64,000 bases of DNA from positions 1 to 64,000 of IMG/VR virus record IMGVR_UViG_3300033153_007973. One strand, written 5' to 3'. A program made the position numbers and the translations under genes. Below, in pieces: positions 12,040 to 34,962 of the stretch; position 1 is the first letter of the stretch, and every line of letters starts with the position of its first letter. Under the pieces are notes generated by a model. It ran no database searches and was not told the origin of the DNA. It saw only the letters and a list, made by a program, of their open reading frames with translations.

Positions 12040-12774
12040 TTAGTTATAAGGATGGAATGGCAGCTGTTCTTTAAAGTCATTGTATCTAACTCTGCTGACA
12101 ATCGTTCCTATTTGTTCTTCTGTTACTCGAGTATTACGAGATAATGGTTGACTATCGTATACATATTTGAGAATGGCATCCATCTCAGCATAAGTCATTC
12201 CGATGTCACCTTCATCTGTCTGATCCTTCCATAGTTCAGCAGTTGCTGGTCTATCGATAATCTCTTCAGGTACTTTGAGAATTTTCGCCATCTCATATAC
12301 GTCTGTTTTGTAGACATTCCAGAGAGGAGCAATATCTTCTGCACCATCACCATGAAGAGTATAGTATCCTAGCATTCTCTCGGTCTTATTGCTTGTACCG
12401 AGTACGATTGATTGATGGGCTTTAGCCTGATCATATAGACAAATCATGCGCACTCTGGCCATGATGTTGCCTTTACGTATTAAACTGAGATCTGTATTAA
12501 GGTCTGCACATGCATTTACTGCATGTGAGATAGGTATGGTCATGTGATTTACATGCATCTGTTCTGCGAGGCGACCTGCAATAGTGGTTGATGATGTACG
12601 AGTATACGGTAAGCTGTATGTTCGTACACAGTCATATCCTATGGCCTTCACTGCCAACATAAGACAGACCGCTGAGTCCAAGCCTCCGGAGAGACCCAGA
12701 ACCACTCCTTGCATGTCTCCTACTTTTTCTACGATAAACTTTGTGAGTTCATCTATCTTATATTCTATATTCAT
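12040..12774 (-). CDS. nadE: NH3-dependent NAD+ synthetase
   Basis: VVLGLSGGLDSA, GNIMARVRM, VLGTSNKTE..LGYYTLHGDG, PATAELW..QTDE. The ORF-track start overlaps a tRNA; true start likely 12774. Confidence 0.93.
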   Translation of the reverse strand: MNIEYKIDELTKFIVEKVGDMQGVVLGLSGGLDSAVCLMLAVKAIGYDCVRTYSLPYTRTSSTTIAGRLAEQMHVNHMTIPISHAVNACADLNTDLSLIRKGNIMARVRMICLYDQAKAHQSIVLGTSNKTERMLGYYTLHGDGAEDIAPLWNVYKTDVYEMAKILKVPEEIIDRPATAELWKDQTDEGDIGMTYAEMDAILKYVYDSQPLSRNTRVTEEQIGTIVSRVRYNDFKEQLPFHPYN

Positions 12775-12794
12775 CTCATATCCTCCCAGATATG

Positions 12795-12866
12795 CAGCCG
12801 GTGTTGGAATCGAACCAAACGTTCTCAGGATCAAAACCTGATGTCCTACCATTGAACGAACCGGCT
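12795..12866 (-). tRNA. tRNA-Gln(TTG)
   Basis: AGCCGGT/ACCGGCT acceptor, TCAGG-TTTTGAT-CCTGA anticodon arm, TTCGATT T loop. Confidence 0.9.
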
Positions 12867-12868
12867 AT

Positions 12869-14023
12869 TTATGCTCCTGCCTTGAAATTATAGATAGGCT
12901 TAACAAACTTCTTGACCTCGACGGTGTCCTCCATTGCCTTGATAATCATATCTTTATCTTTGTATGCGCCTGGAGCTTCATCGAGAGTGTTCTTTGTTGC
13001 TGATGTTGTAAATACGCCGGCATCCTTCATGCCTGCCTGCATGTCTTCTAGGGAGAGCTGTTCCTTAGCTCTCTTCCTGGAGAGGACTCGGCCGGCACCA
13101 TGTGGTGCTGAGAAGTTCCAGTCCTTATTACCTTTGCCCTTACCAAGAATTAAGCCATCCTTCATATTAAATGGAATGACTACTTCTAGATCCTTAGATG
13201 CATTAATAGCACCCTTGCGGATGATACCAGCATGTGTATCTATATAGTTATGTACTGAATGAATCTGATGTCGTGGTTCGAGACTACACCCCTTTTGCAG
13301 ATGTTCCAGAATCTTCTTAGTTAGTAGTTCTCGATTGATTTGTGCGAAGGTTGTAGCAACTCGCATGTCTTCTAGATACTCTTTAGATCCAAATTCCTCT
13401 GTGAGGAACTCGAGACGGTGATATGCAGCACCAATGAACATCTTCTTCATTGCTTCTTTGGCTTTGTTCTGGTGGTGCATGCAGATATCATTACCAAACT
13501 TTCTGGATCCTGAGTGTATCGTGAGCCATTTCTGATCTTCCTCATCGATGCCTATCTCAATGAAGTGGTTCCCACCACCTAGGCTACCCATTGCATGGAG
13601 GTTTCTGTTAGTGTCTGTCTTCATGCGAGTACCAACTTCTGTGATTCTCTCCATGAGAGGGCCTAAGATGCCTCTGGGATTTGGTGTCTTAGCGTTTACA
13701 CTGAAACCGCTTGCGATGCTATTATGAATAAAGTTGTCAAGCTTCTCGAGGTTGATATCGTCATCATTTAGTTTCGTGGAGAGCACGCCACATCCGATAT
13801 CTACACCCACAATGCAAGGAATGACATATTCATTCGTGGTCATAGTGAATCCAATACAGCTACCCATACCAGCATGACAATCAGGCATAATTACGATATT
13901 GGACTTTGCAAATGCAGGATGGTTAAGGAAGCCATAAATCTGAGTAGTGACAGATTCTTCCAGATGAGATTCATCTGGAAGCATGATCTTAGCTACGTTG
14001 TGCTTTGCTTTGATTACGAACAT
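12869..14023 (-). CDS. rtcB: RtcB RNA ligase (3'-phosphate/5'-OH)
   Basis: IMPDCHAG, VGVDIGCG, GSLGGGNHFIE, IHSGSR, HNY, RKGA, SAPHGAGR, DEAPGAYK. Confidence 0.96.
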   Translation of the reverse strand: MFVIKAKHNVAKIMLPDESHLEESVTTQIYGFLNHPAFAKSNIVIMPDCHAGMGSCIGFTMTTNEYVIPCIVGVDIGCGVLSTKLNDDDINLEKLDNFIHNSIASGFSVNAKTPNPRGILGPLMERITEVGTRMKTDTNRNLHAMGSLGGGNHFIEIGIDEEDQKWLTIHSGSRKFGNDICMHHQNKAKEAMKKMFIGAAYHRLEFLTEEFGSKEYLEDMRVATTFAQINRELLTKKILEHLQKGCSLEPRHQIHSVHNYIDTHAGIIRKGAINASKDLEVVIPFNMKDGLILGKGKGNKDWNFSAPHGAGRVLSRKRAKEQLSLEDMQAGMKDAGVFTTSATKNTLDEAPGAYKDKDMIIKAMEDTVEVKKFVKPIYNFKAGA

Positions 14024-14580
14024 TGTTCTTCCTCCTTCTCCTTCTTGGCTTTGTCTATTTCCAACATACGATGGTACATTACATATACCATAGGATCGAC
14101 AGCTTCATCAATATTATCAGTCCAGTAACAGTGTGCTTTCTTTTCCAGCTCCGAACCATCACCCTCGCCTTTACCAGTGCGTTTAACTTCGGATAGGTCT
14201 ACAGTGAATAGGTGATATACTGTGTCACATGATTTCGTTCCGCGGCAAGTGCCTAAAGACACGAGTTTATCTACGTGAATAGCATATCCTGCTTCTTCCC
14301 ATAACTCTTTGGTAGCCAAAGCAGAGTGGAGAAGCTGGGGTTCCATTCCTCCTGTTAGAGAACTGATCTCTTGTTTCATCGACCAGCAAGGTGTGACTTC
14401 CTTCCGTAGGAGAAATTGGACACCATCTTCTGCATCCTCAGAATATCGGTATGGTAGAATGGCTATAATCTCACCATTACAGCGTTTCTCATGAGAGAAT
14501 ACGTATCCCTTGATGCCCTTTGCAGGGTCAACAGCTCTCTTCAGGGATACCCATTCGTTTTCGTATAGTGTTTCTATCAT
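14014..14580 (-). CDS. NUDIX hydrolase
   Basis: GGMEP....ALATKELWEEAGY Nudix box. Confidence 0.8.
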   Translation of the reverse strand: MIETLYENEWVSLKRAVDPAKGIKGYVFSHEKRCNGEIIAILPYRYSEDAEDGVQFLLRKEVTPCWSMKQEISSLTGGMEPQLLHSALATKELWEEAGYAIHVDKLVSLGTCRGTKSCDTVYHLFTVDLSEVKRTGKGEGDGSELEKKAHCYWTDNIDEAVDPMVYVMYHRMLEIDKAKKEKEEEQCS

Positions 14581-14594
14581 TTTTATCTCCTTTA

Positions 14595-14668
14595 TTGACC
14601 CGGCGAGATTCGAACTCGCGACATTCAGATTAGGAATCTGATACTCTATCCAGCTGAGCTACGAGTCA
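14595..14668 (-). tRNA. tRNA-Arg(CCT)
   Basis: TAGCTCAGCTGGATAGAG D arm; TCAGA-TTCCTAA-TCTGA; TTCGAAT. Confidence 0.92.
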
Positions 14669-14895
14669 GTATTATCTACGTGCTGAAGGCATAATGCTGA
14701 GATCAGCTGCGACAACTGCAAAGTCTCTGCGATTGATACCATGTTGTTCCCATTTGTAATCGTTATCTAACTCAGTTATGGCACGATTCATCTGACGAAA
14801 CGTAAGTATCTTGTCTTCTTCAGTTGCAGATACCGAGATCTTTTGTCTGTTGCGGCAAATGAATTCACCGCGATCATTCATAAAGACATAGACTC

Positions 14896-15435
14896 TCATT
14901 GCTGGCCATCCCTTCTTCCGTGAATAATATGGCTGATATATGATGTTGTGCATTTGTATTTGCGTGCAATTTCTTGTCCTTCAATGCCTGCTCTCCAGAG
15001 ACGTTTTACTTCTCGTCTCATTTTCTTGCGAGACTTTCTTCTGGCAGCATTGATTTTACGTACACGGGTTTTCTTATCGACAGCTGTCTTGATTCGATCA
15101 GCTACATCATTACTATGATTTCTAGATGCATCAATTACTGCAAGCATTTGTTTAATGTCTCTTTGTCTGTGTATTCCCATATAAGGGTATAGCTTAGCTA
15201 AGAGATTCTCAATTTCGTATCGCTTATGAAGACCCCACATATATGCTGTACCATGTACGCGAGGGCGGTTCTTAATTGGATGTACTGTACCGCCGGCGAT
15301 TCCCTTTATCTTGTACATGATATCTCGTTTGTATGATGTGGTGCGGAGTTGAGTAATATTACTATATTTCTGTATGATAAAGGATCCTCGACTCTCAAAG
15401 AACCCAGCTAACCATTTTAAATCACCTATCTTCAT
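14896..15435 (-). CDS. LAGLIDADG-like homing endonuclease with C-terminal HTH
   Basis: LKWLAGFFESRGSF (degenerate LAGLIDADG), LYPYM, EIARKYKCTTSYISHI. Confidence 0.65.
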   Translation of the reverse strand: MKIGDLKWLAGFFESRGSFIIQKYSNITQLRTTSYKRDIMYKIKGIAGGTVHPIKNRPRVHGTAYMWGLHKRYEIENLLAKLYPYMGIHRQRDIKQMLAVIDASRNHSNDVADRIKTAVDKKTRVRKINAARRKSRKKMRREVKRLWRAGIEGQEIARKYKCTTSYISHIIHGRRDGQQ

Positions 15436-15685
15436 CTTTTCTTCCTCTCTTTTTGGACTAGGAAAAACATAGACCAGCTACCAAATTGTATGCCATTTGA
15501 CATCGATGAGTGAACGTATATGTCTGGTTTGTTCTTATCGCTGCAAGCTTCATACTTACCAATGTTAAAGAGATCTCCTGATTGCTTAATGTCTTTCGGT
15601 CTTGCTGGACGATACTCGGTCATATTTGGCTCTATGATATTATAGCGTGTATTCTTGTGCTTCATTTGTTTCTCCTCCCAGAGAT

Positions 15686-15706
15686 CTGGCGTGACAGGAA
15701 TCGAAC
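15686..15706 (-). pseudogene. tRNA 3'-end remnant
   Basis: GTTCGATTCCTGTCACGCCAG: T loop, 3' T stem and acceptor strand only. Confidence 0.45.
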
Positions 15707-15718
15707 GTGTTAGTAATA

Positions 15719-16351
15719 TTATGCGTTTGCCTCTATTTCTTCCTGGATTTCTTCTTTCCTGATTTCATCTAGAAGATCATCTAGGAGAATAGCTTTCTTA
15801 TATGTCATCTCGTACCCGAGAATCTTCGGTTGCTTGGCTGTCCACTCGTCCAGTAGCTTCTGAAGTTCATTCATATCGAGGCTGTCTCTTGCATCTTCAT
15901 GGAAGTTCTCGAGTATGTGATACATTACATCGTCAGCATCAGGAGTCGGTGTGGGACATGAGTTACATGCCCACACATACTTGGGTCTGTCCTCTGGCTT
16001 TCTGTCGCACAGTTCGTCGTCGATTCCTCCATCGGTATTGACGTATCCGTCATTGGAGAAGTCATCGTGATACACGAATTCTCCTTTGTAGTCTTTGAGC
16101 TTAATCTTCTCAGCCGCTTCGAATGCTTTGGCTTCTTTCTCGGATTCCCTCTTGTCGCTACATGCTTGACAGATCGTATAGTGCTTCCTTTTAATGATAG
16201 CACCACATGTGCAGATATTATTGCAGCACTCTTTGGCTATGTTTTGAGCATCAGGTACCTTCGAGCTCCAATGGGTACCGCACTTTCCACAGGCATACGC
16301 CAATACGCCTTGAGGGTTTGAGTCCTTCGAAACTAATTCGATTACGTTCAT
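15719..16351 (-). CDS. Hypothetical Cys-rich (Zn-binding) protein
   Basis: CGKC, CTC, CQAC; start at 16351 follows AAGGAG. Confidence 0.6.
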   Translation of the reverse strand: MNVIELVSKDSNPQGVLAYACGKCGTHWSSKVPDAQNIAKECCNNICTCGAIIKRKHYTICQACSDKRESEKEAKAFEAAEKIKLKDYKGEFVYHDDFSNDGYVNTDGGIDDELCDRKPEDRPKYVWACNSCPTPTPDADDVMYHILENFHEDARDSLDMNELQKLLDEWTAKQPKILGYEMTYKKAILLDDLLDEIRKEEIQEEIEANA

Positions 16352-16362
16352 CTTCGTCTCCT

Positions 16363-16390
16363 TGCGGGTCTGAGAGGATTCGAATCCCTC
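16363..16390 (-). pseudogene. tRNA 3'-half remnant (Trp-like acceptor strand)
   Basis: GAGGGATTCGAATCCTCTCAGACCCGCA. Confidence 0.5.
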
Positions 16391-16408
16391 ATACTCTTTT
16401 CTGTTTAT

Positions 16409-16482
16409 TATCCCTGGGAGGGGTCGAACCTCCAGTCTCTCGGTTCGTAGCCGAGCGCTCTTATCCATTGAGCCACAGGGAC
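16409..16482 (-). tRNA. tRNA-Arg(ACG)
   Basis: GTCCCTG/CAGGGAT; CTCGG-CTACGAA-CCGAG; TTCGACC. Confidence 0.92.
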
Positions 16483-16861
16483 ATTAAAATGAGTAGCGAC
16501 CTTAGTGGGCGGGAAAGCACCGACAGGGAACAGCCTATCCCAGGTCAGGAGCTACTCTTCAGTAACCTGCAACTTCTAATATAATAACCGTTTAACGTAG
16601 TCACCAGCGGTCGCGCCAGGAATCTAGAGTTCCTGTCTAAATACTCATTTTTACCGGTCTGAGTATCCACACAACTTAAATGCTACAACGGCCTTCAACC
16701 GCGCTTTCCACGCAGTATCAGTTTCTTCTTTAAGTATGTATATTGCTATTTGTTTGTCATCTTATCTCACTATAAAGAACATTGTATACGTTACACCCAT
16801 TACGAATCCAAACATCATAAGGGCTATACGTACGTGATATTCTTGCATCTTTTCTCCTTTG

Positions 16862-16936
16862 AGCCGGAAACCGGACTCGAACCGGTAAATGATGGCTTTG
16901 CGGGCCATTGCCTTCCCATTATTTGGCGATTCCGGC
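16862..16936 (-). tRNA. tRNA-Cys(GCA)
   Basis: GCCGGAA/TTCCGGC, U73; ATGGC-CCGCAAA-GCCAT; TTCGAGT. Confidence 0.9.
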
Positions 16937-16939
16937 ATG

Positions 16940-16968
16940 CGGGCCCAGAGGGATTTGAACCCCCAACA
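16940..16968 (-). pseudogene. 3' half of an interrupted tRNA (probably Trp)
   Basis: TGTT-GGGGG-TTCAAAT-CCCTC-TGGGCCC-G begins right after the HNH stop; can pair with the GGGTCTA 5' half at 17578-17615. Confidence 0.7.
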
Positions 16969-17451
16969 CTACATGATATTATATCTTTTGGCCCATTTTC
17001 GTACTGCATTATCGGTTACTCCGAATTCTCTTCCGATAGTGCACCATGATTTGGTCTGTATTGCTATCTTTAGTTCTTCTCTGGAAGGTCTTTCCACCTT
17101 TCTGGATCCTACTGCGGAACATCTATATGAGCAATACTTCTTGTTCTCTGTGAGTTTTCCGCATTGCTTACATACTTGAGTTGGTACAGATTTTTCGCAG
17201 GAATATGTTCCATCATTTTCTAGCTTTGCGATTCCACCCATGTGGAATCTTGCATGTTCTCCTAGACTCCTGAATAACATGAGATTATCAATTTTGTTGT
17301 TAGTGCGATCGTTATCTCTATGATGAACAGTTTCTGATGACGTTAATGGTCGTCCAAACTTTTGTGAGATAACGTATCTATGCTCTAACATCATTCCGTT
17401 TTTACGCGTACTATTGCCTTTTGATGTTTCTTTATATTGCCATTTGCTCAT
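16969..17451 (-). CDS. HNH homing endonuclease with Zn ribbon and C-terminal HTH
   Basis: EHRYV..GRPL...ETVHHRDNDRTNNKIDNL; CKQC..YCSYRC; IGREFGVTDNAVRKW. Confidence 0.88.
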   Translation of the reverse strand: MSKWQYKETSKGNSTRKNGMMLEHRYVISQKFGRPLTSSETVHHRDNDRTNNKIDNLMLFRSLGEHARFHMGGIAKLENDGTYSCEKSVPTQVCKQCGKLTENKKYCSYRCSAVGSRKVERPSREELKIAIQTKSWCTIGREFGVTDNAVRKWAKRYNIM

Positions 17452-17469
17452 ATTCGAACCTCCATACCT

Positions 17470-17498
17470 ATTATAGTATGCAGGTTCGAATTTGTCAA
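17470..17498 (-). promoter_or_regulatory. Consensus sigma70 promoter inside an inverted repeat that covers the SD
   Basis: TTGACA-17-TATAAT; ATTCGAACCT.CATAC / GTATG.AGGTTCGAAT inverted repeat. Confidence 0.85.
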
Positions 17499-17500
17499 CT

Positions 17501-17571
17501 CGGGGTGACCAGGAATCGGACCCGGGTCAAGCGGGTTGGAACCGCGTATGTTGCCACTACACCATCACCCC
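17501..17571 (-). tRNA. tRNA-Trp(CCA), atypical (T loop TCCGATT)
   Basis: GGGGTGA/TCACCCC, G73; GCGG-TTCCAAC-CCGC. Confidence 0.8.
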
Positions 17572-17577
17572 ATTACA

Positions 17578-17615
17578 TTGGAATCCGATGCTCTGCCAAT
17601 TAGAGCTATAGACCC
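17578..17615 (-). pseudogene. 5' half of tRNA-Trp(CCA), truncated in the anticodon loop
   Basis: GGGTCTA-TA-GCTCTAATTGGCAGAGC-A-TCGGA-TTCCAA, then unrelated sequence. Confidence 0.8.
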
Positions 17616-18300
17616 AGCTGTTACTTATCTTTCTCTGCGTCACGTTTGTGTCGTCCTTCATCATCTTCCATGTTATACCACATGTTATCCAACATGTGGC
17701 CAATCATCTGGTATGTTTCGAAGGACGAGCTTGTGAGCTGTCTTATTTCTTTCTCTGTGAAATCAATTTCAGCGATTGTTCTGCCTTTAGGTCCCGGTTT
17801 TCCCACAGATATATTCTGTGTAAACTGTGAGTTTTTCCCGCGCCATCCCGATAGATAGTAACCATCGAGACCACGAATCATCATGTAGTCGGCCTTTACT
17901 GTAGCCCATGGACGTACAATGAAGGATAGTACTACTACTAATAAGCAAATGAATAGCGTATTCCCGAACCACTTTAGCATTATTCCTCCCTTATGACAGC
18001 TTCGTGGTTGCAGCATGGCATATAGAATATTTCCTCGTCCTGATCGGTGGTGTGTTCACCATTGACGTAGAAACCATCATTCCCCGCTTTGACAGTAATC
18101 TTCTTACCACAGTTGGGACATTTGGTGTCCTCTGGAGGTGTAAAGATTATTAGCTCTTCGCCGTATTCTTCGTCCAGTTTCTTAACTGCCATATTTTCCT
18201 CCTATTCCCAAATCTTATATACTATAAACTGCAGAATACCTAATCCAATTATTACTGGAATCATCCATTTATACTTTATTGTGTCAATCATTATTCTCTC

Positions 18301-19196: not shown

Positions 19197-19268
19197 TCGG
19201 GGTGAGAGGGATCGAACCTCCGATCTCTGCGTCCCAAACGCAGCGCCCTACCGCTAGGCTACACCCCG
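19197..19268 (-). tRNA. tRNA-Pro(TGG); its 5' end contains the HNH stop codon
   Basis: CGGGGTG/CACCCCG; CTGCG-TTTGGGA-CGCAG; TTCGATC. Confidence 0.92.
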
Positions 19269-19753: not shown

Positions 19754-19759
19754 GTACCT

Positions 19760-19788: not shown

Positions 19789-19791
19789 CCA

Positions 19792-24079: not shown

Positions 24080-24081
24080 TT

Positions 24082-25613: not shown

Positions 25614-26342
25614 TCAGCCCGTCGCGAGCTTCTTTGCTTTCTTTCTGTCTGTTCGCCATATTTCTCCTCGTGTTTTGGCTACAGTTTGAGCAAGTTTTAC
25701 GTACTCATTTCGTCCATCCTGAAAGCAGCCACTATTGATTACCTTAACTGATCCCATTTGTTTTACAAATGGTTTTTCGTGTGTATGTCCGTAGACTATG
25801 ATGTCTAATCGGTTGCCCTTTGCAAATTTATAAGCTTTATCTCTGAATGGTGTGTAATCTTTGTCGAGTCCACTGGATAGTTCCTTGCCCTTCTTCCAGC
25901 CAATTGCCATTTCGATTGGTTTCCATATCCATCTGACTGCCCATTTACATGCTTTCTTCTTGAGTCCGCGGTACTCGAGAGTAGGATCATGAATGATACC
26001 GACCTTTAGATCACCCCAAATAATGATTAGAAGATCGATTCCGATTGATAGTCCATCATCAGTATCATCATGGTTTCCATTGATGATCATTTGCTCCATG
26101 GCCCAGCTGGTTTCTTCTGGCCATGCTTTATATATATCTTCTATATCGTATTGCCATGCTTCAAACCAATCGCCACAAATGGTCCAGAACCACTTTTTGC
26201 GTGCTCCTGTCATCATCCATTCTAGACCAGCTTTACTGGCAACAGCATTATCTGCTGAGTCTTTTCCGCCTAAATGAGCATCTGATGCTACATATATAGG
26301 CTTCTTTGGGTCGTACTCTACGATCTTTGTTCGAATCTTCAT
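25614..26342 (-). CDS. Calcineurin-like metallophosphoesterase
   Basis: SDAHLG, GDWFE, GNHD, YGHTH, NSGCF. Confidence 0.85.
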   Translation of the reverse strand: MKIRTKIVEYDPKKPIYVASDAHLGGKDSADNAVASKAGLEWMMTGARKKWFWTICGDWFEAWQYDIEDIYKAWPEETSWAMEQMIINGNHDDTDDGLSIGIDLLIIIWGDLKVGIIHDPTLEYRGLKKKACKWAVRWIWKPIEMAIGWKKGKELSSGLDKDYTPFRDKAYKFAKGNRLDIIVYGHTHEKPFVKQMGSVKVINSGCFQDGRNEYVKLAQTVAKTRGEIWRTDRKKAKKLATG

Positions 26343-27093: not shown

Positions 27094-27963
27094 TCAGAAT
27101 GGAATGTCATTTTCAGCTACCTTTCTCACTTTCTTAAGTACAGGCTTAATCTTCTCCTCTTTCGCCATATCAGGTGCTAGTCCTTTCACATGTGCTGGAT
27201 CTAGTCGGCTGCCAATAACACCATTTCTAGAATCAAGGATATCAAGTAGATATTTACGTTCTTCTTCGTCTTCCTGTTTCTCTTTACTGAGATCAGTAGG
27301 TGCTCCACTGAGATATCCTCCAGTGTGCATCTTAAGATCTTCCCAATCATTAATAGCTAATGCATTGATTCCAACAGCTATTTTAGTAACATCTGCGCCG
27401 CGGATCTTATATCCGCGCTTGATAAACTTCATCATTCTGTAAAGAGTGCTGAATGGATATGGTAACTTATTGATTCGTAGCATACGTGACGCTACATCCT
27501 GTAGATAGTTCTGACTGCAGTTAATTATTCTAGTAAATGGATACCATGCTGCCATACATATCGTGAAGTCGAAGTTTTCTGTGATGAATGCAGGATCTCC
27601 TACTGGATCCTTGATAAACTGATAGAAATAGTTATCTATCTGTATATTAATAGCTCGCTTGCTTTCCTTCCATTTGTATCCTCGAATTACTAGACCTTTT
27701 CTTGACATACTTCTAGATCGATCGAATGATTTAAGATAGATACGTAGTTTCGTAATGAGTTCTTTGTGAGTACAGAAGATGTCGATATCACGAGGTTTCT
27801 CGCCTACGAAGAGTGACGTAATAGCACCTCCGGCCACGAAGAATGCACAATGCTCATTCTTCTTCCTAAGGACTTGAGAGTCCGCTATTTTGAGGAAGTC
27901 ACTAATAGGTTGTATTATCTGTGTGAGTGTATAAGTTTGATCCGGGGCTTCAATTTGGATCAT
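27094..27963 (-). CDS. Nucleotidyltransferase (tRNA-NTase / poly(A) polymerase head-like) with an SSB-like DIPF tail
   Basis: FVAGGAITSL..EKPRDIDIF, FDFTIC, RMMKFIKRGY; ends ENDIPF. Confidence 0.75.
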   Translation of the reverse strand: MIQIEAPDQTYTLTQIIQPISDFLKIADSQVLRKKNEHCAFFVAGGAITSLFVGEKPRDIDIFCTHKELITKLRIYLKSFDRSRSMSRKGLVIRGYKWKESKRAINIQIDNYFYQFIKDPVGDPAFITENFDFTICMAAWYPFTRIINCSQNYLQDVASRMLRINKLPYPFSTLYRMMKFIKRGYKIRGADVTKIAVGINALAINDWEDLKMHTGGYLSGAPTDLSKEKQEDEEERKYLLDILDSRNGVIGSRLDPAHVKGLAPDMAKEEKIKPVLKKVRKVAENDIPF

Positions 27964-28792: not shown

Positions 28793-28997
28793 ATAAGTAC
28801 CTCACATAGTGGCATCCCAGTCTGTGATCTCCTCTTCAATCTTGAAAGAGAAGTTAACGCAGTCCTTACACTTTTTATAATTGAAATCCTTTCCGACCCC
28901 CTTTACGGGGCAAGGCTTGTTTGCAATTAGGCAAATGCCTAGGCCTTCGATATACCAGTTCTTGTGCTTAGGTTCTCCATCTTTCCAGCGATCTTGG

Positions 28998-29744
28998 CTA
29001 CCCATCTTTCTTTGCCCTCCCAGTTATACCGATTTGTCTGAGAATCGGTGTTATATTACCATGTGTAGAAGCACAATATGGCCATTTTGGATCAAATAAG
29101 AATGTGTTTGTATCTATTACTGGTGCTCTTATATTTACGATTATATTGTCCTTAAGTCTGTATTCCTGGTACTTTTTCTCATTGATTGCTTTTACTACTG
29201 AACAGTGATCTTCATCATCATCTGAGAAGTCCTCGTTTTCGAATATACACCATCCTCCGACACCACTCGGACTTTTCTCGTCTTCTTCGAGTGGATCAAC
29301 TTCTCCACAGATAAGTCTGTCTTCTTTATTTCGATTGAGTATTTCACAGTGTGGGTATTCTTTTATAACGTCATACTCATTTCTGCCAATCCACATTGCT
29401 CTTGATTCCTCTGATTTGCCGCCAGTTCTGGCACCTTCCCATATTGTGTAGAACTTCTCTATAGCTTCTAGGATACTGTCAGCTTCTATCATTATTTGAC
29501 TAGAACGTCTTCCCGTGAGATATCGTCTGATATTTGATGGTATTAGATCTTTCTTCTTATTGTATCTGAAGTATAATCCGACATTATCTACACATATGAG
29601 TTTCTCTGGTCCCCAATTTGTGGAACCCGAACTGCGGACCATTATTGGTATCTTGTATATAAATCTGGGGCTACTAGAGAATGGTTCTGGCAAGCCTGGC
29701 AATGTTCCTTGCATCGTCTCCACCATTATGAGGTCGTCCTTCAA
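28998..29744 (-). CDS. Hypothetical protein
   Basis: 248-aa ORF; start uncertain. Confidence 0.55.
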   Translation of the reverse strand: MKDDLIMVETMQGTLPGLPEPFSSSPRFIYKIPIMVRSSGSTNWGPEKLICVDNVGLYFRYNKKKDLIPSNIRRYLTGRRSSQIMIEADSILEAIEKFYTIWEGARTGGKSEESRAMWIGRNEYDVIKEYPHCEILNRNKEDRLICGEVDPLEEDEKSPSGVGGWCIFENEDFSDDDEDHCSVVKAINEKKYQEYRLKDNIIVNIRAPVIDTNTFLFDPKWPYCASTHGNITPILRQIGITGRAKKDG

Positions 29745-30243
29745 ATTCCATATTCTTTATTTTAAGGGCACTACTAACGCCTTTGCCCTTCTTAATCTTC
29801 TCTCTGAATGAGAACAGGGTCTTAATGTTAATATGAGAGTCTCTGAATGGATACTTGATTTGTTTACGATTGCATTCTCTATGGAATTGCTTACGATCAT
29901 AATCGCCCCAGGATGCCCAGACTGTATCTTTGAGCTTTGGCACAAGACGAATTAACTCATCTAGTGCTTCTTTCAAGGGTATTCCGCCTTCTGTAAGCTC
30001 TTCTTCAGTGTGTCCTGTGAGCTCTGTGCAGAACTCACTGATATCCATGACACTAGGTTTTACGAGTATGCTGCCGCTGGCAGATGTTCTCCAGTCTGGA
30101 TGTTGAATGATTGCCCATCCGATTTCGATGATCTCCATTTCTTTCTCGATCTTAGTTTGGAGTCCATCTTTAGCATCTGTATTTTTCCAACACGTTGCCT
30201 CTAAATCTATAATAAGTAGCTTGTTAAGTTCCGTCCTGGTCAT
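29674..30243 (-). CDS. DEDDh 3'-5' exonuclease (ERI-1/KapD-like)
   Basis: IIDLEATCW, EIIEIG, FCTELTG, WASWGDYD, HNGGDDARN. Confidence 0.9.
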   Translation of the reverse strand: MTRTELNKLLIIDLEATCWKNTDAKDGLQTKIEKEMEIIEIGWAIIQHPDWRTSASGSILVKPSVMDISEFCTELTGHTEEELTEGGIPLKEALDELIRLVPKLKDTVWASWGDYDRKQFHRECNRKQIKYPFRDSHINIKTLFSFREKIKKGKGVSSALKIKNMEFEGRPHNGGDDARNIARLARTIL

Positions 30244-30983
30244 TTGCTGCTTCCTCTTGTACTGGATTGAATATTTCATCTTGAGTGGGTTGTTTTGGTA
30301 ACTCTGCTTCACCGCGGCAGACTTTGATCATATGTCGCTTCTCAGCTTCGAGTATGTTTTCATCGATTTCAAAGAACTTGGCTAGTATTTTTGGAATGTT
30401 GTGATATCTATCTCCTGTTCTTAGATAGTCTTTCTCGTATGCCCATTCCATGAATTCCCCTATCTTCTGGGAATACTTTGCTACTTTATCTAGTTTGTCG
30501 TGTTCTGGATATCCGCTCATGTTTTTCTCCATGGATCGAATAGTTCACTCATAGTTGGCTTCGCTGGTTCTATAACTTTCTGTTTTCTAAGAGTAATCTC
30601 GAGTGTTGCTCTTGCTTCTTCCTTTTTAATGTAGTTCATAAATGAGTTCATGAATCTATTATCTACTATGAGTGTTTTCTCATCCATAGCTTGTCGAATA
30701 TCTTGTATCTCTGTAACTCTTCGTTCTAGTTCGTCTAATGTATCCATCATTTTATGAGTGCTAGCCATATTTCCTCCTAGACAATAGTACCCTTATCTTC
30801 CTTCGCTTCCTTAACAGCTTTATCGAATTCTTCTCTTCTCAGTGGATCTGGATCGAATAAATCATTCATTGATGGTTTGGGTACTGGTTTGAATACTATA
30901 GTAAACTTTGCGTATCCTGATGGGCTACCACCTCTGTCTATTCTGACGTAGCCAGGAGTATTAGTATTATATTCAGTGTTCAT
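30224..30983 (-). CDS. Three small hypothetical proteins (30224-30532, 30517-30768, 30777-30983), each with the [DE][LI]F[DN]P tag
   Basis: PTQDEIFNP, PTMSELFDP, PSMNDLFDP. Confidence 0.65.
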
Positions 30984-30984
30984 T

Positions 30985-31026
30985 TGCCGGGGTGGGAGTC
31001 GAACCCACCTGGTGATCCAATCCGGC
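30985..31026 (-). ncRNA. tRNA minihelix-like element (acceptor + T arm only)
   Basis: GCCGG-ATTGGATCACCAG-GTGGG-TTCGACT-CCCAC-CCCGGC-A. Confidence 0.55.
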
Positions 31027-31037
31027 GACCTATTACT

Positions 31038-32246
31038 TTATTTCTTTGATGCTTTGCTTTTCACGCCAGCATCTCTCATCATTTTCTTGGAGAGATCATA
31101 CATGGCGTTGTAACCCATGGCAGCCAAGGGATTCTCGGCGCCACCACTTTTACCACTGTTGCCGCTCATTACGACACCAGGGAAGCGAGTCTTCGAAAGG
31201 TTCTTCGAGACTGCATCAGCAATCTTGAGATCAAATTCTGCCCTTTCTCTTGGTGTAAGTCCGGCAGCTACCAAAGCTCGGTTAGCTGCGGCCTTGGCTG
31301 CACCCTCGGCTCTGACCTTCTTGGCTGTTTCCAGAGCTCTTTTAGCTGCATACTGCTCGACTTCGAATGCTTTCTGGGCTTCGGTAACTGCAGCGACTCT
31401 GATAACGTCCTTCTCGGCTTTGGCCTTGGCGATTTTGGCTTTACCCATTTCCAGGGCAGTAATTGTATCCTGCTTTGCGCGGATGGCTGCTTGTTTCGCT
31501 AGCTCTGTAGCCATAGCTTCATCCTTGCGTTTGGCGATCATTTTCTCGACTTGCTCGTCAAACTGTGGTACGTCAATTACACATTGGTTGATGACGCAAC
31601 CAATTTTGGCGAGTTGGTTCGGGAGACGCTTAGGATTTCCGGCTTTGTCTCTTACAATAACAGTAACCTTCTGCATCTCTTTGGCGCCGACTGATTTCTC
31701 AATATATCGGGTGTCGGACTTGGTGACGTAAATGCCGTTCTGAAGCTGATCTTCAACTGCCTGTTGGAACAGTGCCAGTGTGGTGTATGCGTCCTGTGCA
31801 CTTCTTAGGTTCGCGGACAGCTTGACAGCATTCTGGACGATGGGAACCACACCGGATACGATAAAGTGATCGAATCCCGCGGCATAGTCGTTCTTCAGTT
31901 GGAGTGCTCCCTCAACCGTTTTCGGTAACTGGATTCTGACCAGGCCAGAGATCTGGGCTTTAGAGCCGTCATTGAAGATAACTGGAATAGCACTGATGTC
32001 GGCGGTTCCTTCACCCTTTGATTTTCCGAACCCGACCGTAGCCACGTTCTTGTAGGTAAAGATCTCGCCGAACATTTGTGCATACCAGCCTGGCCTAAGC
32101 CTGACTGACATGGAGCCTGTTCCGGCTGCTTGCTTGACCTGAAAGTATCCTGCTCTGTTTACCTCAAAGAGGGATCCTGCACACAGAAGGAGGACGAAGC
32201 CAGCGATACAGACGCCAATGACAATCTTCATCTTTTGGGTCATCAT
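31038..32246 (-). CDS. SPFH / band-7 domain membrane protein
   Basis: N-terminal TM, PGWY, IPVIFNDG, Ala/Lys-rich coiled-coil C-terminus. Confidence 0.8.
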   Translation of the reverse strand: MMTQKMKIVIGVCIAGFVLLLCAGSLFEVNRAGYFQVKQAAGTGSMSVRLRPGWYAQMFGEIFTYKNVATVGFGKSKGEGTADISAIPVIFNDGSKAQISGLVRIQLPKTVEGALQLKNDYAAGFDHFIVSGVVPIVQNAVKLSANLRSAQDAYTTLALFQQAVEDQLQNGIYVTKSDTRYIEKSVGAKEMQKVTVIVRDKAGNPKRLPNQLAKIGCVINQCVIDVPQFDEQVEKMIAKRKDEAMATELAKQAAIRAKQDTITALEMGKAKIAKAKAEKDVIRVAAVTEAQKAFEVEQYAAKRALETAKKVRAEGAAKAAANRALVAAGLTPRERAEFDLKIADAVSKNLSKTRFPGVVMSGNSGKSGGAENPLAAMGYNAMYDLSKKMMRDAGVKSKASKK

Positions 32247-32494
32247 TATCTATTCTCCTCTATTATTTTATGATCTTGTCGACATCGTCGACATCTTTCT
32301 TGGCTTGTTTTACGTCGACTTTACGAGCACGCTTAGCCAGTTTCGCATTCTCATCGACACCCTCGATTTTTTCGTCGAGTTGGTTCCCCCTTTCCTCTTT
32401 GTCGGCTGTTTTCCAGGCTTTCCTGGCACGTTTATAAATGAAGTAACCACCGATGAGTAGTATGATGAGTGTGACTATTATCTGCAAGAACATG

Positions 32495-32887
32495 TCATTC
32501 CCCTTTCATCTTTAATAAGCTGATAAGGTGTATACATTGCACCTTTGTAAGCGATCCTATATGTAGTTCAGCGAGGCCCATAGCTTTACCCACAGTGGAA
32601 TATGCTTCCTTACGAGATATTGCGGCACGGTGTCCTTTCCAGAGCTTGTCAAATTCTGTGTGTGCAGTGATTCTTGCTTGGCGGGTTTCCTTATCGGCGG
32701 GCACGCCCATTGGTTCCCCGGTTCCTTGATGAGCGCTGTGTTTGCAATCGCATTTTGGCCACGTAGAACAGCTGTAGAATAAGCCATACTTGCTGTTCTT
32801 TAGGACCATCTTGCTTTGGCATGATGGACATGTAACGTCATGCTCTTTGACCCCAGTGTCACTGAGCTTTCCAATCTTCTTTGGCAT
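32495..32887 (-). CDS. Zn-ribbon protein (topoisomerase C4 ribbon + DUF3268-like)
   Basis: CPSC..MVLKNSKYGLFYSCSTWPKC, AHTEFDKLW, LHIG. Confidence 0.7.
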   Translation of the reverse strand: MPKKIGKLSDTGVKEHDVTCPSCQSKMVLKNSKYGLFYSCSTWPKCDCKHSAHQGTGEPMGVPADKETRQARITAHTEFDKLWKGHRAAISRKEAYSTVGKAMGLAELHIGSLTKVQCIHLISLLKMKGE

Positions 32888-32901
32888 TTCCCCTCCTAGG
32901 A

Positions 32902-33237
32902 TTAATCGATGATCATGCCTATTACGAGGCCAGTGCACATACCATTGGAATGTCCTTCTGACTCGCCTTCTTCTTGGGAGATCTCCTGAATCTTCTTGAG
33001 TTCTCCACCGTCGAGCCATATTCCCTTACATTTTGGGCATTTATCAATAATGATTGTCTCAATGAGTTTCTTCTTCATTTTGGTGTTGCAGATCATACAT
33101 GTACGAGTTCCTTCGCGTTCTATCTTGATTTTGAGTTCACATTTTTCGCATACGTACAAATCCTCGAATTTATTGTGTGTACGTGTTCCACACCTATAAC
33201 ACTTTTTTCCTAGAAAGAAGTCTGCTACTTTTCCCAT
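32902..33237 (-). CDS. Small Zn-finger protein (zf-TFIIB-like)
   Basis: CMIC..M...IDKCPKCKGIWLDGGEL. Confidence 0.7.
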   Translation of the reverse strand: MGKVADFFLGKKCYRCGTRTHNKFEDLYVCEKCELKIKIEREGTRTCMICNTKMKKKLIETIIIDKCPKCKGIWLDGGELKKIQEISQEEGESEGHSNGMCTGLVIGMIID

Positions 33238-33267
33238 GATAATTCCTCCTTTTTGATCGTATCCATT

Positions 33268-33341
33268 CGTTCCTGGCGGGAGTCGAACCCACAATCTATG
33301 GAGTAGAAATCCATTGCCCTAATCCATTAGGCCACAGGAAC
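33268..33341 (-). tRNA. tRNA-Arg(TCT)
   Basis: GTTCCTG/CAGGAAC; ATGGA-TTTCTAC-TCCAT; TTCGACT. Confidence 0.92.
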
Positions 33342-33355
33342 TAATGTTTTATCCA

Positions 33356-34408
33356 TTATTTTCCATGAACGATATCATTGAACTTTTCGTTTGCGTCATA
33401 TCCCCATTCTCGACCGATTTTACACTCTTCTTCTTCATCAACCTTGAAGATATCAGCTGTGCACGTGGGTCCTTTAGGGATGAAACTTCCGGTACCGATA
33501 CCATCAAACGCATCTTTGACATGCATAAAGGCTTCTGTCTTCACGGCGTCAAATCCTGAGGATACAAAGATCTTAACGCCTTTTCCACCTGCTGCATCGA
33601 GTTCACTGCGTAAACGAGCAACGGCATTCATAGTAACACCTTTCTCTAGGGCATTTGAGGAACTGTCAATCTGAGCATAGTTCTCACCACAAGTGTCGGT
33701 GCGTACTCCATAAAGCTTGTCTCCACAGTGTTTAAGGAGTGATAAAGTATCATCAATCTCCTTATTATTATAATCGATCAGGGCAATAAACTTGTCATCT
33801 GGGAGAGCTTTCATGTATGCATCTGCCATCTTGATATAATCTCCGCGGAAGATAGCAATCAAAGCATGAGGTGTGGTTCCTATTCCTTTACCAGAAGGTA
33901 GGTCAATTTGATTGATAATGTTACGTATATCATCGGCACGGTTACTGAGATAATTCTGTGCTTCTGCTCCTGTATCAGTACTGACTCCTCTGATTCCGCC
34001 AACGTATCCACCATATGATGCTAGTGCAACAGATTCTGCACCATAGAGATGACGTGCAGAGAAATCAAGAACTGGTTTCCCATCTGCTGCGTTCACAATT
34101 GCTTTGGCATGATATGCACAGTAACAAGGTAGAGCGCACCATTGAAGGTAAAGAGTCTCGAGCTCTACGATGTTCTGGAAGAATCCTTTTACAATCATCA
34201 TAGTATCACCAGATTTAAACTCAGTTCCAGTGGGAAGGATATCGATATCTGACATGGGTGCTAGTGTTCTGATCAGTGCCGCTGCAGGTTCGAGTGCAGC
34301 AATACCATTAGAGCGACCAAATATACGATATGATACTCGTGGATTCATCCTGGTTTCCTCAGCAACAATTCGGGATTTGCTGAAGTACTTATCTGTGAAT
34401 GGATTCAT
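33356..34408 (-). CDS. pncB: Nicotinate phosphoribosyltransferase-like (short type II PRTase)
   Basis: TDKYF, ELET, DFSARH, GTTPHALI, LIDY, GVRTDT, IFVSSGF, GIGTGS, TADI. Confidence 0.82.
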   Translation of the reverse strand: MNPFTDKYFSKSRIVAEETRMNPRVSYRIFGRSNGIAALEPAAALIRTLAPMSDIDILPTGTEFKSGDTMMIVKGFFQNIVELETLYLQWCALPCYCAYHAKAIVNAADGKPVLDFSARHLYGAESVALASYGGYVGGIRGVSTDTGAEAQNYLSNRADDIRNIINQIDLPSGKGIGTTPHALIAIFRGDYIKMADAYMKALPDDKFIALIDYNNKEIDDTLSLLKHCGDKLYGVRTDTCGENYAQIDSSSNALEKGVTMNAVARLRSELDAAGGKGVKIFVSSGFDAVKTEAFMHVKDAFDGIGTGSFIPKGPTCTADIFKVDEEEECKIGREWGYDANEKFNDIVHGK

Positions 34409-34962
34409 TTGCTGGACCCATTTTGCACAGTTATACCGTATAGGGTCAACATACGTTGAAGAGCAGCTTCCCCTGCTTCTGGTATCAGATCATCTACGAG
34501 ATCTTTGTGAACAATGATTTTCGGGAGCTTCTTATCTTGGTTCTTCATCTCATTGATGATCGAGGTAACGACATCATGGACACAAATGCTTGTGCATACA
34601 CCAGTTATATGGATTTCGGGATTTTCCTTACCCTCACACCAGTCTATGATGTTATTAACAATGCAAGCAGATGTATATCCCTTCTTGACAAAGCGAATAA
34701 TGGCTTTGTTCTCCGGAATAGCATCTTCAATAGGTTCAACGATCTTCGTACCTTCTGTCTCTTCGATACAGTGTTCTGGGAACAGCTTGAATTCAGGATC
34801 ACCTTTGCTGTGTCTGTCCATGGTGAGCATAATATCACCATCAAATGCTTTGACGAAATTGGCTACACGACCTTGAAGTTCTTTCGTGTCGTGACCAATA
34901 TACAACTTACCATCCTTATTTAGAAAGTCATTCTGCATATCTACTACGATTAGTAATTTCAT
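34405..34962 (-). CDS. pncA: Nicotinamidase / pyrazinamidase
   Basis: VVDMQNDF...G.L, MDRH, FPEHC...TEG, K, GVCTSICV. Confidence 0.88.
   Translation of the reverse strand: MKLLIVVDMQNDFLNKDGKLYIGHDTKELQGRVANFVKAFDGDIMLTMDRHSKGDPEFKLFPEHCIEETEGTKIVEPIEDAIPENKAIIRFVKKGYTSACIVNNIIDWCEGKENPEIHITGVCTSICVHDVVTSIINEMKNQDKKLPKIIVHKDLVDDLIPEAGEAALQRMLTLYGITVQNGSSK

What the first reader, a model, noticed from the sequence alone, without database searches (positions are those of the whole stretch)
12040..34962. Deamidating NAD salvage route (PncA-PncB-NadE): possible alternative NAD-reconstitution pathway
Seen: an adjacent pncA-pncB pair (33356-34962) plus nadE (12040-12774) and a NUDIX gene (14014-14580); NADAR and macro-like genes lie at 48.6-50.6 kb. 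Established: NAD-depleting defences (Thoeris, SIR2/DSR) yield nicotinamide + ADP-ribose, and the described phage counter-pathways NARP1 and NARP2 use Adps/Namat or NAMPT/NMNAT. Inference: this phage rebuilds NAD via nicotinate (Preiss-Handler type). No NadD/NadM-type adenylyltransferase was seen in the window.
Basis: partly seen in the sequence, partly recalled or inferred. Interest (0 to 1): 0.6.

Follow-up and report, generated by a model that had tools for sequence, protein, structure and literature searches.

The report
Phage deamidating NAD salvage genes
A complete 234-kb uncultured phage encodes its own nicotinamidase, nicotinate-type phosphoribosyltransferase, NAD synthetase and an ADP-ribose-pyrophosphatase-like Nudix enzyme but no adenylyltransferase. 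This is a host-dependent, cut-down version of a nicotinamide-to-NAD recycling gene set that related large phages carry in full, and it may keep NAD available when bacterial defences destroy it.

Summary
On the minus strand, a nicotinamidase (PncA, 34405-34962) overlaps by 4 nt (ATGA) a 350-aa type II phosphoribosyltransferase (33356-34408). The predicted fold of that transferase matches solved nicotinate PRTases best. A short NH3-type NadE (12040-12774) and a divergent Nudix with an ADP-ribose-pyrophosphatase fold (14014-14580) lie 20 kb away, around RtcB and tRNA genes. NADAR (48586-49071) is real; the "macro-like" gene has only weak support.

The window is the start of a complete 234,008-bp phage genome. 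That genome has no NadD/NadM/NadR-type adenylyltransferase, no NAMPT/Namat and no Prs/Adps, so it is not NARP1, 2 or 3.

The transferase belongs to a clade found only on uncultured, phage-like contigs. Some members carry a compact PncA, NadM-like, PRTase, NadE, Nudix, Metallophos cluster. Others carry only PncA plus PRTase.

The most likely function is nicotinamide to nicotinate to NaMN, then host NadD to NaAD, then phage NadE to NAD. A counter-defence role is plausible but untested.

Preiss-Handler genes in jumbo phages have already been reported from annotation (Li et al. 2024). I therefore rate this a new variant of a known kind, of moderate interest.

The parts
34405..34962 (-). Nicotinamidase (PncA-like, 185 aa), first gene of the pncA-PRTase pair
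   Evidence: Pfam Isochorismatase 2.2e-14. Solved relatives are nicotinamidases/pyrazinamidases (5ZN8, 3S2S, 1ILW, 3PL1). D8, K94 and C127 plus D49/H51/H64 are present. It is the only such gene in the genome.
33356..34408 (-). Type II phosphoribosyltransferase (350 aa), archaeal-type nicotinate PRTase-like. Its start overlaps the PncA stop (ATGA).
33268..33341 (-). tRNA-Arg(UCU), directly downstream of the PRTase (context, not part of the pathway)
   Evidence: ARAGORN
12040..12774 (-). NH3-dependent, single-domain NAD synthetase (NadE, 244 aa)
   Evidence: Pfam NAD_synthase 1.6e-63. TIGR00552 scores 212.9 bits against a cut-off of 63.65. Best solved relatives are 2E18, 1XNG, 3P52 and 3FIU. The SGGLDS PP-loop is present. 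There is no glutaminase domain.
12794..12866 (-). tRNA-Gln between RtcB and NadE; it fixes the NadE start at 12774
   Evidence: ARAGORN
12869..14023 (-). RtcB RNA ligase, lying between the Nudix gene and NadE (co-located; probably tRNA repair rather than NAD chemistry)
   Evidence: Pfam RtcB 1.5e-66. RtcB lies within 10 kb of this PRTase class in 11 of 25 viral loci.
14014..14580 (-). Divergent Nudix hydrolase (188 aa) with an ADP-ribose/NDP-sugar pyrophosphatase-like fold; overlaps RtcB by 10 nt
   Evidence: No Pfam hit. Homologous to the PF00293-positive Nudix next to NadE in L023 (6.7e-11). 137 homologues found. AF2 pLDDT 96.3. Best PDB matches are M. tuberculosis ADPRase 1MQW (TM 0.74), NUDT5, E. 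coli ADPRase 1G9Q and YffH.
48586..49071 (-). NADAR-domain protein (ADP-ribose-related accessory gene)
   Evidence: Pfam NADAR 4.6e-26. In one relative's contig a NADAR gene lies directly beside NadE.
50136..50672 (-). Possible macro-like protein (weak)
   Evidence: phrog_335 'phosphatase' 4.4e-16. PDB macro domain 5M31 at E 0.018. No Pfam Macro match in the genome.

Best explanation
The phage encodes three of the four enzymes of the deamidating nicotinamide salvage route, plus an ADP-ribose-pyrophosphatase-like Nudix.

Proposed steps:
1. PncA hydrolyses nicotinamide to nicotinate and ammonia.
2. The translationally coupled PRTase joins nicotinate to PRPP to give NaMN.
3. The host's own adenylyltransferase (NadD in bacteria) makes NaAD, because the phage has none.
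4. The phage's ammonia-dependent NadE amidates NaAD to NAD.
5. The Nudix enzyme probably splits ADP-ribose into AMP and ribose-5-phosphate, which host Prs can turn back into PRPP.

The net effect would be faster rebuilding of NAD from the two products of NAD cleavage during infection. The most likely selective reason is NAD-depleting host immunity.

Shown here: gene presence and integrity, family and fold assignments, catalytic residues, gene coupling, recurrence in related phages, and absence of an adenylyltransferase.

Inferred: every substrate, the use of host NadD, and the counter-defence role.
For: Families and folds.

The 4-nt ATGA overlap of PncA and the PRTase is shown.

If the PRTase used nicotinamide, both PncA and NadE would be pointless. 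Yet this PRTase class keeps company with them:
- PncA lies within 10 kb in 18 of 25 loci, NadE in 10 of 25 and a NadM-like gene in 6 of 25.
- L023 has a contiguous PncA, NadM-like, PRTase, 130-aa ORF, NadE, Nudix, Metallophos cluster.
- L020-L022 carry the same set of genes, less compactly.
- The adenylyltransferase in these relatives is NadM-type (TIGR01527 2e-14; PDB NMNATs 1EJ2 and 1F9A).

The window's PRTase sits inside a clade of 38 sequences from uncultured, phage-like contigs (SH-aLRT 96).

The whole complete genome lacks the following:
- PF01467;
- any relative of the clade's NadM-like protein (tblastn; six-frame hmmsearch --max, best E 0.44);
- NAMPT/Namat PF04095;
- Prs/Adps;
- a NadR kinase domain and CinA.

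The surrounding region holds other counter-defence-type genes: a Gad2-like protein, RtcB and an RNA ligase, NADAR and 11 tRNA genes.
Against: - No enzyme activity, expression data or infection phenotype is available.
- The PRTase fails the curated cut-offs of the NAPRTase models (157 bits against 378; 141 against 243) and has no Pfam NAPRTase hit. In the fold ranking, the margin over Namat, NAMPT and QPRT is small for the lower NAPRTase rows (13.9 against 13.4).
- NadE is 20 kb from pncA and the PRTase. It is only 29% identical to the NadE of the PRTase's closest relatives, so the three genes were not inherited as one unit.
- The host is unknown, so the supply of NadD is assumed, not checked.
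- Some complete relatives carry the PRTase alone (G010 and G016). This shows the enzyme can be useful without the rest of the set.
Confidence: 0.7

Rival explanations
1. The chemistry is the same, but the role is housekeeping. The genes are auxiliary metabolic genes that raise NAD supply for a large phage's own replication and redox needs, or that complement hosts with poor nicotinamide recycling. They would not be a specific answer to NADase immunity.
For: Li et al. 2024 interpret jumbo-phage NAD genes largely in this way and report that phage and host pathways complement each other. The gene set is variable and often partial. The genome encodes an ATP-dependent DNA ligase and no NAD-dependent one, so no obvious phage NAD consumer was found that would call for defence-independent supply. 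That absence also means no positive evidence for this reading.
Against: The starting substrate is nicotinamide, and the companion Nudix looks like an ADP-ribose hydrolase. These two compounds are exactly the products of NADase effectors. The genes lie among counter-defence-type genes (Gad2-like, NADAR, RtcB, tRNAs). NARP1, 2 and 3 show that NAD rebuilding does act as counter-defence.
Confidence: 0.3
2. NadE acts as an NMN synthetase (NaMN to NMN), as in Francisella. The last step is then NMN to NAD, made by a NadM- or NadR-type enzyme. In this phage that enzyme would have to come from the host.
For: The relatives pair a short NadE with a NadM-type, not a NadD-type, adenylyltransferase and an ADPRase-like Nudix. 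That is the Francisella combination as described in PMC3376133. FtNadE (3FIU) is among the four best solved relatives of the window's NadE.
Against: The window's NadE is nearest to ordinary cellular short NadEs (41-46% identity, Chloroflexota-type) and to P. horikoshii, H. pylori and C. jejuni enzymes deposited as NH3-dependent NAD synthetases. With these it aligns through the C-terminal tail to residue 240, whereas the alignment with FtNadE stops at 202. Archaeal NadE tested in vitro had no NMN synthetase activity, and archaeal NadM is reported to accept NaMN.
Confidence: 0.15
3. The PRTase is really a nicotinamide-using enzyme, either NAMPT-like or Namat-like (acting on ADPR-PP). The pathway would then be an amidated NARP1- or NARP2-like route.
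Against: The ten best structural matches and all NCBIfam matches are nicotinate PRTases. There is no PF04095 match, no Prs/Adps and no NMNAT in the genome. Tight coupling to a nicotinamidase, and recurrent linkage to NadE, make no sense for an amidated route.
Confidence: 0.07
4. The genes are not an NAD pathway at all. On this reading, the isochorismatase-fold hydrolase and the PRTase act on another amide or base, for example in nucleotide or RNA modification linked to the nearby RtcB and tRNA genes. NadE would be an unrelated acquisition.
For: RtcB is near this PRTase class in 11 of 25 loci. tRNA genes flank the PRTase, NadE and the Nudix gene. NadE is of a different lineage from that of the PRTase's closest relatives.
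Against: The nicotinamidase-specific metal site and the catalytic triad are conserved. Four or five different NAD-pathway families recur together with the PRTase across distant phage contigs.
Confidence: 0.05

Closest known systems
Preiss-Handler gene clusters annotated in gut jumbo phages (pncB-nadD-nadE, e.g. Kuafu_71; Li et al. 2024, PMC11662467)
   Same: Large phages that encode a nicotinate PRTase and NadE, and so a deamidated route to NAD. Phage pncA is mentioned there too. The evidence in both cases is annotation only.
   Different: Here the route starts one step earlier, from nicotinamide, through a PncA coupled to the PRTase. The PRTase is the short archaeal type (no PF04095 hit). The adenylyltransferase is absent from this genome, and in the relatives it is NadM-type rather than NadD. 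An ADPRase-like Nudix accompanies the set. By that paper's criterion (all pathway genes present), this phage would not count as an 'NAD-jumbo phage'.
NARP2 (NAMPT + NMNAT; related to Vibrio phage KVP40 NadV/NatV)
   Same: It rebuilds NAD from nicotinamide and PRPP with phage enzymes. The KVP40/NadM-type systems also include an ADPRase-type Nudix (from my own knowledge).
   Different: NARP2 is amidated (nicotinamide to NMN to NAD) and self-sufficient. This genome has no PF04095 and no PF01467 match. The route here goes through nicotinate and needs NadE.
NARP1 (Adps + Namat)
   Different: There is no Prs-like Adps. ADP-ribose is probably hydrolysed by the Nudix rather than pyrophosphorylated, and the PRTase is closer to NAPRTases.
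NARP3 (PnuC-like transporter + NadR-like enzyme; PMC13464706)
   Same: A phage NAD-restoring module. A 76-aa PnuC-like membrane ORF lies 1.7 kb beyond the window.
   Different: There is no NadR. The PnuC-like match is short and below the cut-off. The substrate here is nicotinamide, not nicotinamide riboside.
Bacterial PncA-PncB-NadD-NadE nicotinamide recycling, and the archaeal-type NAPRTases (T. acidophilum 1YTD, P. furiosus 2I14)
   Same: The same four-step logic. The PRTase is most similar in sequence to the archaeal-type enzymes.
   Different: The phage enzyme is shorter: the 350-aa model aligns up to about residue 356-359 of the 389-aa chains. It shares only 20-25% identity with them and forms its own phage-only clade.
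Francisella NadE (NMN synthetase) + NadM-Nudix route
   Same: The relatives combine a short NadE, a NadM-type adenylyltransferase and an ADPRase-like Nudix.
   Different: In the phages the Nudix and NadM are separate genes, and this phage lacks NadM. The order of amidation and adenylylation is unknown.

Membership tests
Nicotinamidase (PncA) | Isochorismatase-like fold/family | tested here: met
   PF00857 2.2e-14, 54 bits against a cut-off of 27. Solved relatives are nicotinamidases.
Nicotinamidase (PncA) | Asp-Lys-Cys catalytic triad | tested here: met
   D8 and C127 are conserved in at least 90% of the 18 aligned phage homologues. K94 aligns with Lys in most of them (alignment to 5ZN8).
Nicotinamidase (PncA) | Metal-binding Asp/His/His site, which sets nicotinamidases apart from other isochorismatase-fold hydrolases (from my own knowledge) | tested here: met
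   D49, H51 and H64 are conserved in at least 90% of sequences.
Nicotinamidase (PncA) | Hydrolysis of nicotinamide to nicotinate | not testable with these tools
   Needs an enzyme assay.
Nicotinate phosphoribosyltransferase (NAPRTase) | Type II PRTase fold closest to solved NAPRTases | tested here: met
Nicotinate phosphoribosyltransferase (NAPRTase) | Score above the curated family thresholds | tested here: not met
   PRK07188 157.3 bits against a cut-off of 378. PRK08662 140.7 against 243. No PF04095 hit, and only a sub-threshold QRPTase_N hit.
Nicotinate phosphoribosyltransferase (NAPRTase) | Conserved active-site His in the GTxxH motif (the phosphohistidine of ATP-coupled NAPRTases; from my own knowledge) | tested here: inconclusive
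   H181 in GTTPHA is invariant in 50 homologues and aligns with GTMPHA of 2I14. Its equivalence to the phosphorylated His was not verified.
Nicotinate phosphoribosyltransferase (NAPRTase) | Nicotinate preferred to nicotinamide or quinolinate | not testable with these tools
   Only context supports this: coupling to PncA and linkage to NadE.
NAD synthetase (NadE, NH3-dependent) | NAD_synthase family with the PP-loop SGGxDS; no glutaminase domain | tested here: met
   PF02540 1.6e-63. TIGR00552 212.9 bits against 63.65. PRK13980 251.4 against 255, just below cut-off. 244 aa, single domain, SGGLDS present.
NAD synthetase (NadE, NH3-dependent) | Substrate is NaAD rather than NaMN | tested here: inconclusive
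   The C-terminal tail aligns with 2E18, 1XNG and 3P52 but not with FtNadE. The nearest relatives are ordinary cellular NadEs. No specificity residues could be verified, and the key paper is not held.
Nudix hydrolase, ADP-ribose/NDP-sugar pyrophosphatase subgroup | Nudix box GX5EX7REUXEEXGU | tested here: inconclusive
   The box is degenerate: the core KELWEEAGY is kept, position 7 is Leu and Arg is replaced by Lys. No Pfam hit for this protein, although about a quarter of the listed homologues carry PF00293.
Nudix hydrolase, ADP-ribose/NDP-sugar pyrophosphatase subgroup | Fold with the N-terminal beta domain typical of ADPRases | tested here: met
   pLDDT 96.3. Best matches are 1MQW (TM 0.74), NUDT5, 1G9Q, K. 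pneumoniae ADPRase and YffH.
Complete Preiss-Handler / deamidating salvage pathway | NaMN adenylyltransferase (NadD or NadM) | tested here: not met
   No PF01467 match at E <= 1 in the complete genome. No tblastn or six-frame profile hit to the relatives' NadM-like protein.
NARP1 | Adps (Prs-like) and Namat (NAMPT-family) | tested here: not met
   No PF13793 and no PF04095 match in the genome.
NARP2 | NAMPT and NMNAT | tested here: not met
   No PF04095 and no PF01467 match.
NARP3 | PnuC-like transporter and NadR-like bifunctional enzyme | tested here: not met
   Only a 76-aa PnuC-like ORF below the cut-off (24.4 bits against 27.3). No NMNAT. AAA_28 matches are Walker-A only.
NADAR | NADAR domain | tested here: met
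   PF08719 4.6e-26, 92 bits against a cut-off of 35.
Macro domain | Macro family or fold | tested here: inconclusive
   No PF01661 match in the genome. 50136-50672 gives only 5M31 at E 0.018 and phrog_335. It was not folded.

The most novel reading that the evidence does not exclude
A fourth, deamidating NAD-reconstitution pathway exists in a clade of uncultured large phages.

In its full form it is a PncA, NadM-like, archaeal-type NAPRTase, NadE, ADPRase-like Nudix (and Metallophos) cluster. It would recycle both products of NADase immunity: nicotinamide via nicotinate, and ADP-ribose via ribose-5-phosphate and PRPP.

The phage in this window would be a reduced form. It keeps PncA-NAPRTase, NadE and the Nudix and borrows the host's essential NadD. 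It would still overcome Thoeris, DSR or SIR2-type defences.
Probability: 0.35. Interest if true: 0.7.

Novelty: new variant of a known kind. Interest (0 to 1): 0.45.

Why it matters
NAD depletion is one of the commonest outcomes of bacterial anti-phage immunity. Only three phage pathways that rebuild NAD (NARP1, 2 and 3) have been demonstrated, and all three are amidated routes.

If the deamidating set described here restores NAD during infection, three things follow:
- It would add a fourth route, one that uses different enzymes.
- It would show that phages can run a pathway partly on an essential host enzyme.
- It would explain why a distinct, phage-only lineage of short nicotinate PRTases, missed by Pfam NAPRTase and PHROGs, is spread through uncultured large phages.

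The finding also gives a concrete, small set of genes to test.

Tried and rejected
Searches that found nothing or did not help:
- Cultured-phage relatives: megablast of the locus, and tblastn of the PRTase and of the RNAP-like protein against INPHARED, gave nothing useful. PncA gave only distant hits.
- The search for related loci with the single PRTase found nothing. The alignment-based scan worked.
- No sequencing run was listed for the locus, so read laying was not used and nothing is known about expression.
- Promoter and terminator scans were not above their shuffled controls.

Candidates for a hidden adenylyltransferase, rejected:
- 27094-27963 hit a PHROG 'nucleotidyltransferase' family but is Gad2-like.
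- The 241-aa ORF upstream of PncA has no informative relatives and a poor Atlas model.
- AAA_28 hits are P-loop only. No CinA/PncC. No NAD-dependent ligase.

NadE specificity:
- The Francisella NMN-synthetase paper is not held. The specificity residues I recall could not be verified, so I did not use them.

Corrections and choices:
- The longer NadE ORF (12040-12852) is rejected because it runs over tRNA-Gln.
- 49442-49912 gave no support as a macro-like gene.
- The large representative protein search and complex prediction were not used, because no claim here rests on them.
- No alternative genetic code was needed.

Full report
**Setting.** The window is the first 64 kb of a complete virus record of 234,008 bp with direct terminal repeats. 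The genome has about 43% G+C, and nearly all genes in the region of interest lie on the minus strand. A 1208-aa protein with RNA polymerase beta and beta-prime domains, the genome size and many tRNA genes mark it as a jumbo phage. Nothing similar is present among cultured phages, and no sequencing run could be listed. The host is therefore unknown.

**Check of the observation.**
- PncA (34405-34962) is an isochorismatase-family protein. Its best solved relatives are nicotinamidases.
  - In an alignment with 17 other PncA-like phage sequences, the catalytic Asp8 and Cys127 and the metal ligands Asp49, His51 and His64 are conserved, and Lys94 aligns with Lys in most.
- The PncA stop codon overlaps the start of the next gene as ATGA.
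- That next gene (33356-34408, 350 aa) matches only NCBIfam's nicotinate PRTase models, and below their cut-offs. It has no Pfam NAPRTase hit and no PHROG hit.
- NadE is clear-cut: Pfam 1.6e-63, TIGR00552 well above its cut-off, a single domain and the SGGLDS motif.
- The 'NUDIX' gene (14014-14580) is invisible to Pfam, and no PF00293 match exists in the genome. It does have a degenerate Nudix box.
  - It is homologous to a Pfam-positive Nudix that sits next to NadE in a relative, and 137 homologues were found.
  - It folds with pLDDT 96 into an ADP-ribose-pyrophosphatase-like structure. The best match is M. tuberculosis ADPRase at TM 0.74, followed by NUDT5, E. coli ADPRase and YffH.
- NADAR (48586-49071) is confirmed.
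- The macro-like call has only weak support, and only for 50136-50672.

**What the PRTase is.**
- An AlphaFold model built on 50 homologues is confident (pLDDT 94.6).
- Foldseek ranks the archaeal-type NAPRTases 2I14 and 1YTD first.
- His181 in a GTxPH motif is invariant.
- The strongest argument for nicotinate is context. A nicotinamide-using PRTase would make the coupled nicotinamidase and NadE useless.

**Relatives.**
- The word-based protein search found about 38 close homologues (41-62% identity). All are unnamed metagenomic proteins, and many lie on contigs of 140-205 kb. Identity then drops to cellular archaeal-type NAPRTases at about 30%.
- In a quick maximum-likelihood tree, the window's protein lies in a clade of 38 sequences (SH-aLRT 96) made up only of such sequences.
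- Gene neighbourhoods and profile searches of 25 loci show a variable but recurrent module:
  - a PncA-like gene within 10 kb in 18 of 25 loci;
  - NadE in 10 of 25;
  - an adenylyltransferase in 6 of 25;
  - RtcB in 11 of 25.
- These loci are not all independent: L008-L010 are identical, and so are L015-L016.
- The most compact case, L023, reads PncA, adenylyltransferase, PRTase, 130-aa ORF, NadE, Nudix, Metallophos.
- The adenylyltransferase is NadM-type, not NadD. Its best matches are TIGR01527 and the archaeal NMNAT structures 1EJ2 and 1F9A.
- Other arrangements match the window. L032 has the same 4-nt PncA-PRTase overlap with no NadE or NadM within 4 kb. One contig has NADAR directly beside NadE.
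- Whole-record scans show one complete phage with the full set (G003), one with PncA plus PRTase plus RtcB only (G019), and two with the PRTase alone (G010, G016).

**The missing step.**
- The complete genome has no PF01467 match at E <= 1, although all 14 control genomes do.
- It has no tblastn hit to the relatives' NadM-like proteins.
- A six-frame profile search with filters off gave nothing better than E 0.44.
- It also lacks NAMPT/Namat, Prs/Adps, a NadR kinase domain, CinA and an NAD-dependent ligase.
- The phage therefore cannot make NAD from nicotinamide on its own, and it is not NARP1, 2 or 3.
- In the tree, the window sits in an unresolved subclade that also holds the NadM-bearing loci. 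This is compatible with secondary loss but does not prove it.
- The window's NadE is only 29% identical to that of those loci and is nearest to cellular short NadEs. The set in this phage was therefore assembled from different sources.

**Mechanism proposed.**
1. Nicotinamide to nicotinate (PncA).
2. Nicotinate to NaMN (PRTase, with PRPP).
3. NaMN to NaAD (host NadD).
4. NaAD to NAD (phage NadE). This could use the ammonia that PncA releases.
5. The Nudix would convert ADP-ribose to AMP and ribose-5-phosphate, feeding host Prs.

The first two steps are probably co-translated. NadE and the Nudix flank RtcB in what looks like one transcription unit, with tRNA genes at its borders.

An alternative order, as in Francisella (NaMN to NMN by NadE, then NadM), cannot be excluded, especially for the relatives. 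For this NadE it is less likely.

**Role.** The substrates are the products of NADase effectors. The region also carries a Gad2-like protein, NADAR, RtcB and a second RNA ligase and 11 tRNA genes. This fits a counter-defence and takeover region. It is inference; a general supply role is a live rival.

**Comparison with the literature.**
- NARP1 and NARP2 (preprint 10.1101/2024.02.11.579819) and NARP3 (PMC13464706) are the described phage NAD reconstitution pathways. The NARP preprint does not mention nicotinate, PncA or NadE.
- Li et al. 2024 (PMC11662467) had already annotated Preiss-Handler gene sets (pncB-nadD-nadE) in gut jumbo phages and mention phage pncA.
- No paper in the library reports a tested deamidating counter-defence.

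**Verdict.** The finding is a new variant of a known kind. It has a nicotinamidase front end, a phage-specific lineage of short archaeal-type NAPRTases, NadM-type partners in relatives, an ADPRase-like Nudix, and, in this genome, dependence on a host adenylyltransferase.

Noticed in passing
window 27094-27963 (-): 289-aa protein that resembles Gad2 (Gabija anti-defence 2) nucleotidyltransferases. ESM Atlas feature score 0.97, with all 30 hits in Gad2 clusters. It also hits PHROG 'nucleotidyltransferase' families.
   Followed up: partly
window 5261-33341 (-), and genome 65.3-66.9 kb (+): Eleven tRNA genes are scattered on the minus strand among the accessory genes. Three directly flank the NAD genes: tRNA-Gln 12794-12866, tRNA-Arg(CCU) 14595-14668 and tRNA-Arg(UCU) 33268-33341. 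Six more lie just beyond the window.
   Followed up: partly
window 12869-14023 (-) and 41509-42609 (-): The window holds RtcB and a second RNA ligase (PHA02142 OB-fold + RNA_ligase). RtcB recurs within 10 kb of this PRTase class in 11 of 25 viral loci. The reason for that linkage is unexplained; it may be a shared counter-defence island aimed at tRNA-cleaving defences.
   Followed up: partly
genome 65724-65954 (+), L026:1486-1716: 76-aa membrane ORF that matches the first 70 positions of the PnuC/NMN_transporter family (E 3.1e-6, below the cut-off). It could be a half-size, SemiSWEET-like transporter unit or a chance or partial match.
   Followed up: no
window 608-4234 (-): 1208-aa protein that combines RNA polymerase Rpb2 domain 6 and Rpb1 domain 2. 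This is a fused beta/beta-prime-like subunit of a phage multisubunit RNA polymerase.
   Followed up: no
L020:17733-19415, L021:14069-15751, L022:17797-19482, L024:1-1307: Relatives carry a TROVE/Ro60 + vWA protein a few kb from the NAD cluster, followed by a Nudix and a Metallophos phosphoesterase. The window's genome has no TROVE homologue.
   Followed up: no
unnamed ENA contig that encodes P0008, genes at 3768-4241 and 4234-5058: A NADAR gene lies immediately upstream of NadE and overlaps it, in a close relative of the PRTase clade. This links NADAR to the NAD module more directly than in the window.
   Followed up: no
window 9351-10493, 10896-11486, 25614-26342, 29674-30312, 31038-32246, 32495-33019 (all -): Other annotated genes in the region, in coordinate order: ATP-dependent DNA ligase, ClpP protease, Metallophos phosphoesterase, RNase T-like exonuclease, SPFH/Band 7 protein, and a DUF3268/topoisomerase-type zinc-ribbon protein directly downstream of the PRTase.
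   Followed up: no
L034:303-2999: In another member of the PRTase clade, the order is radical SAM enzyme, NadE, PRTase, with no PncA nearby. This is one more variant of the module.
   Followed up: no
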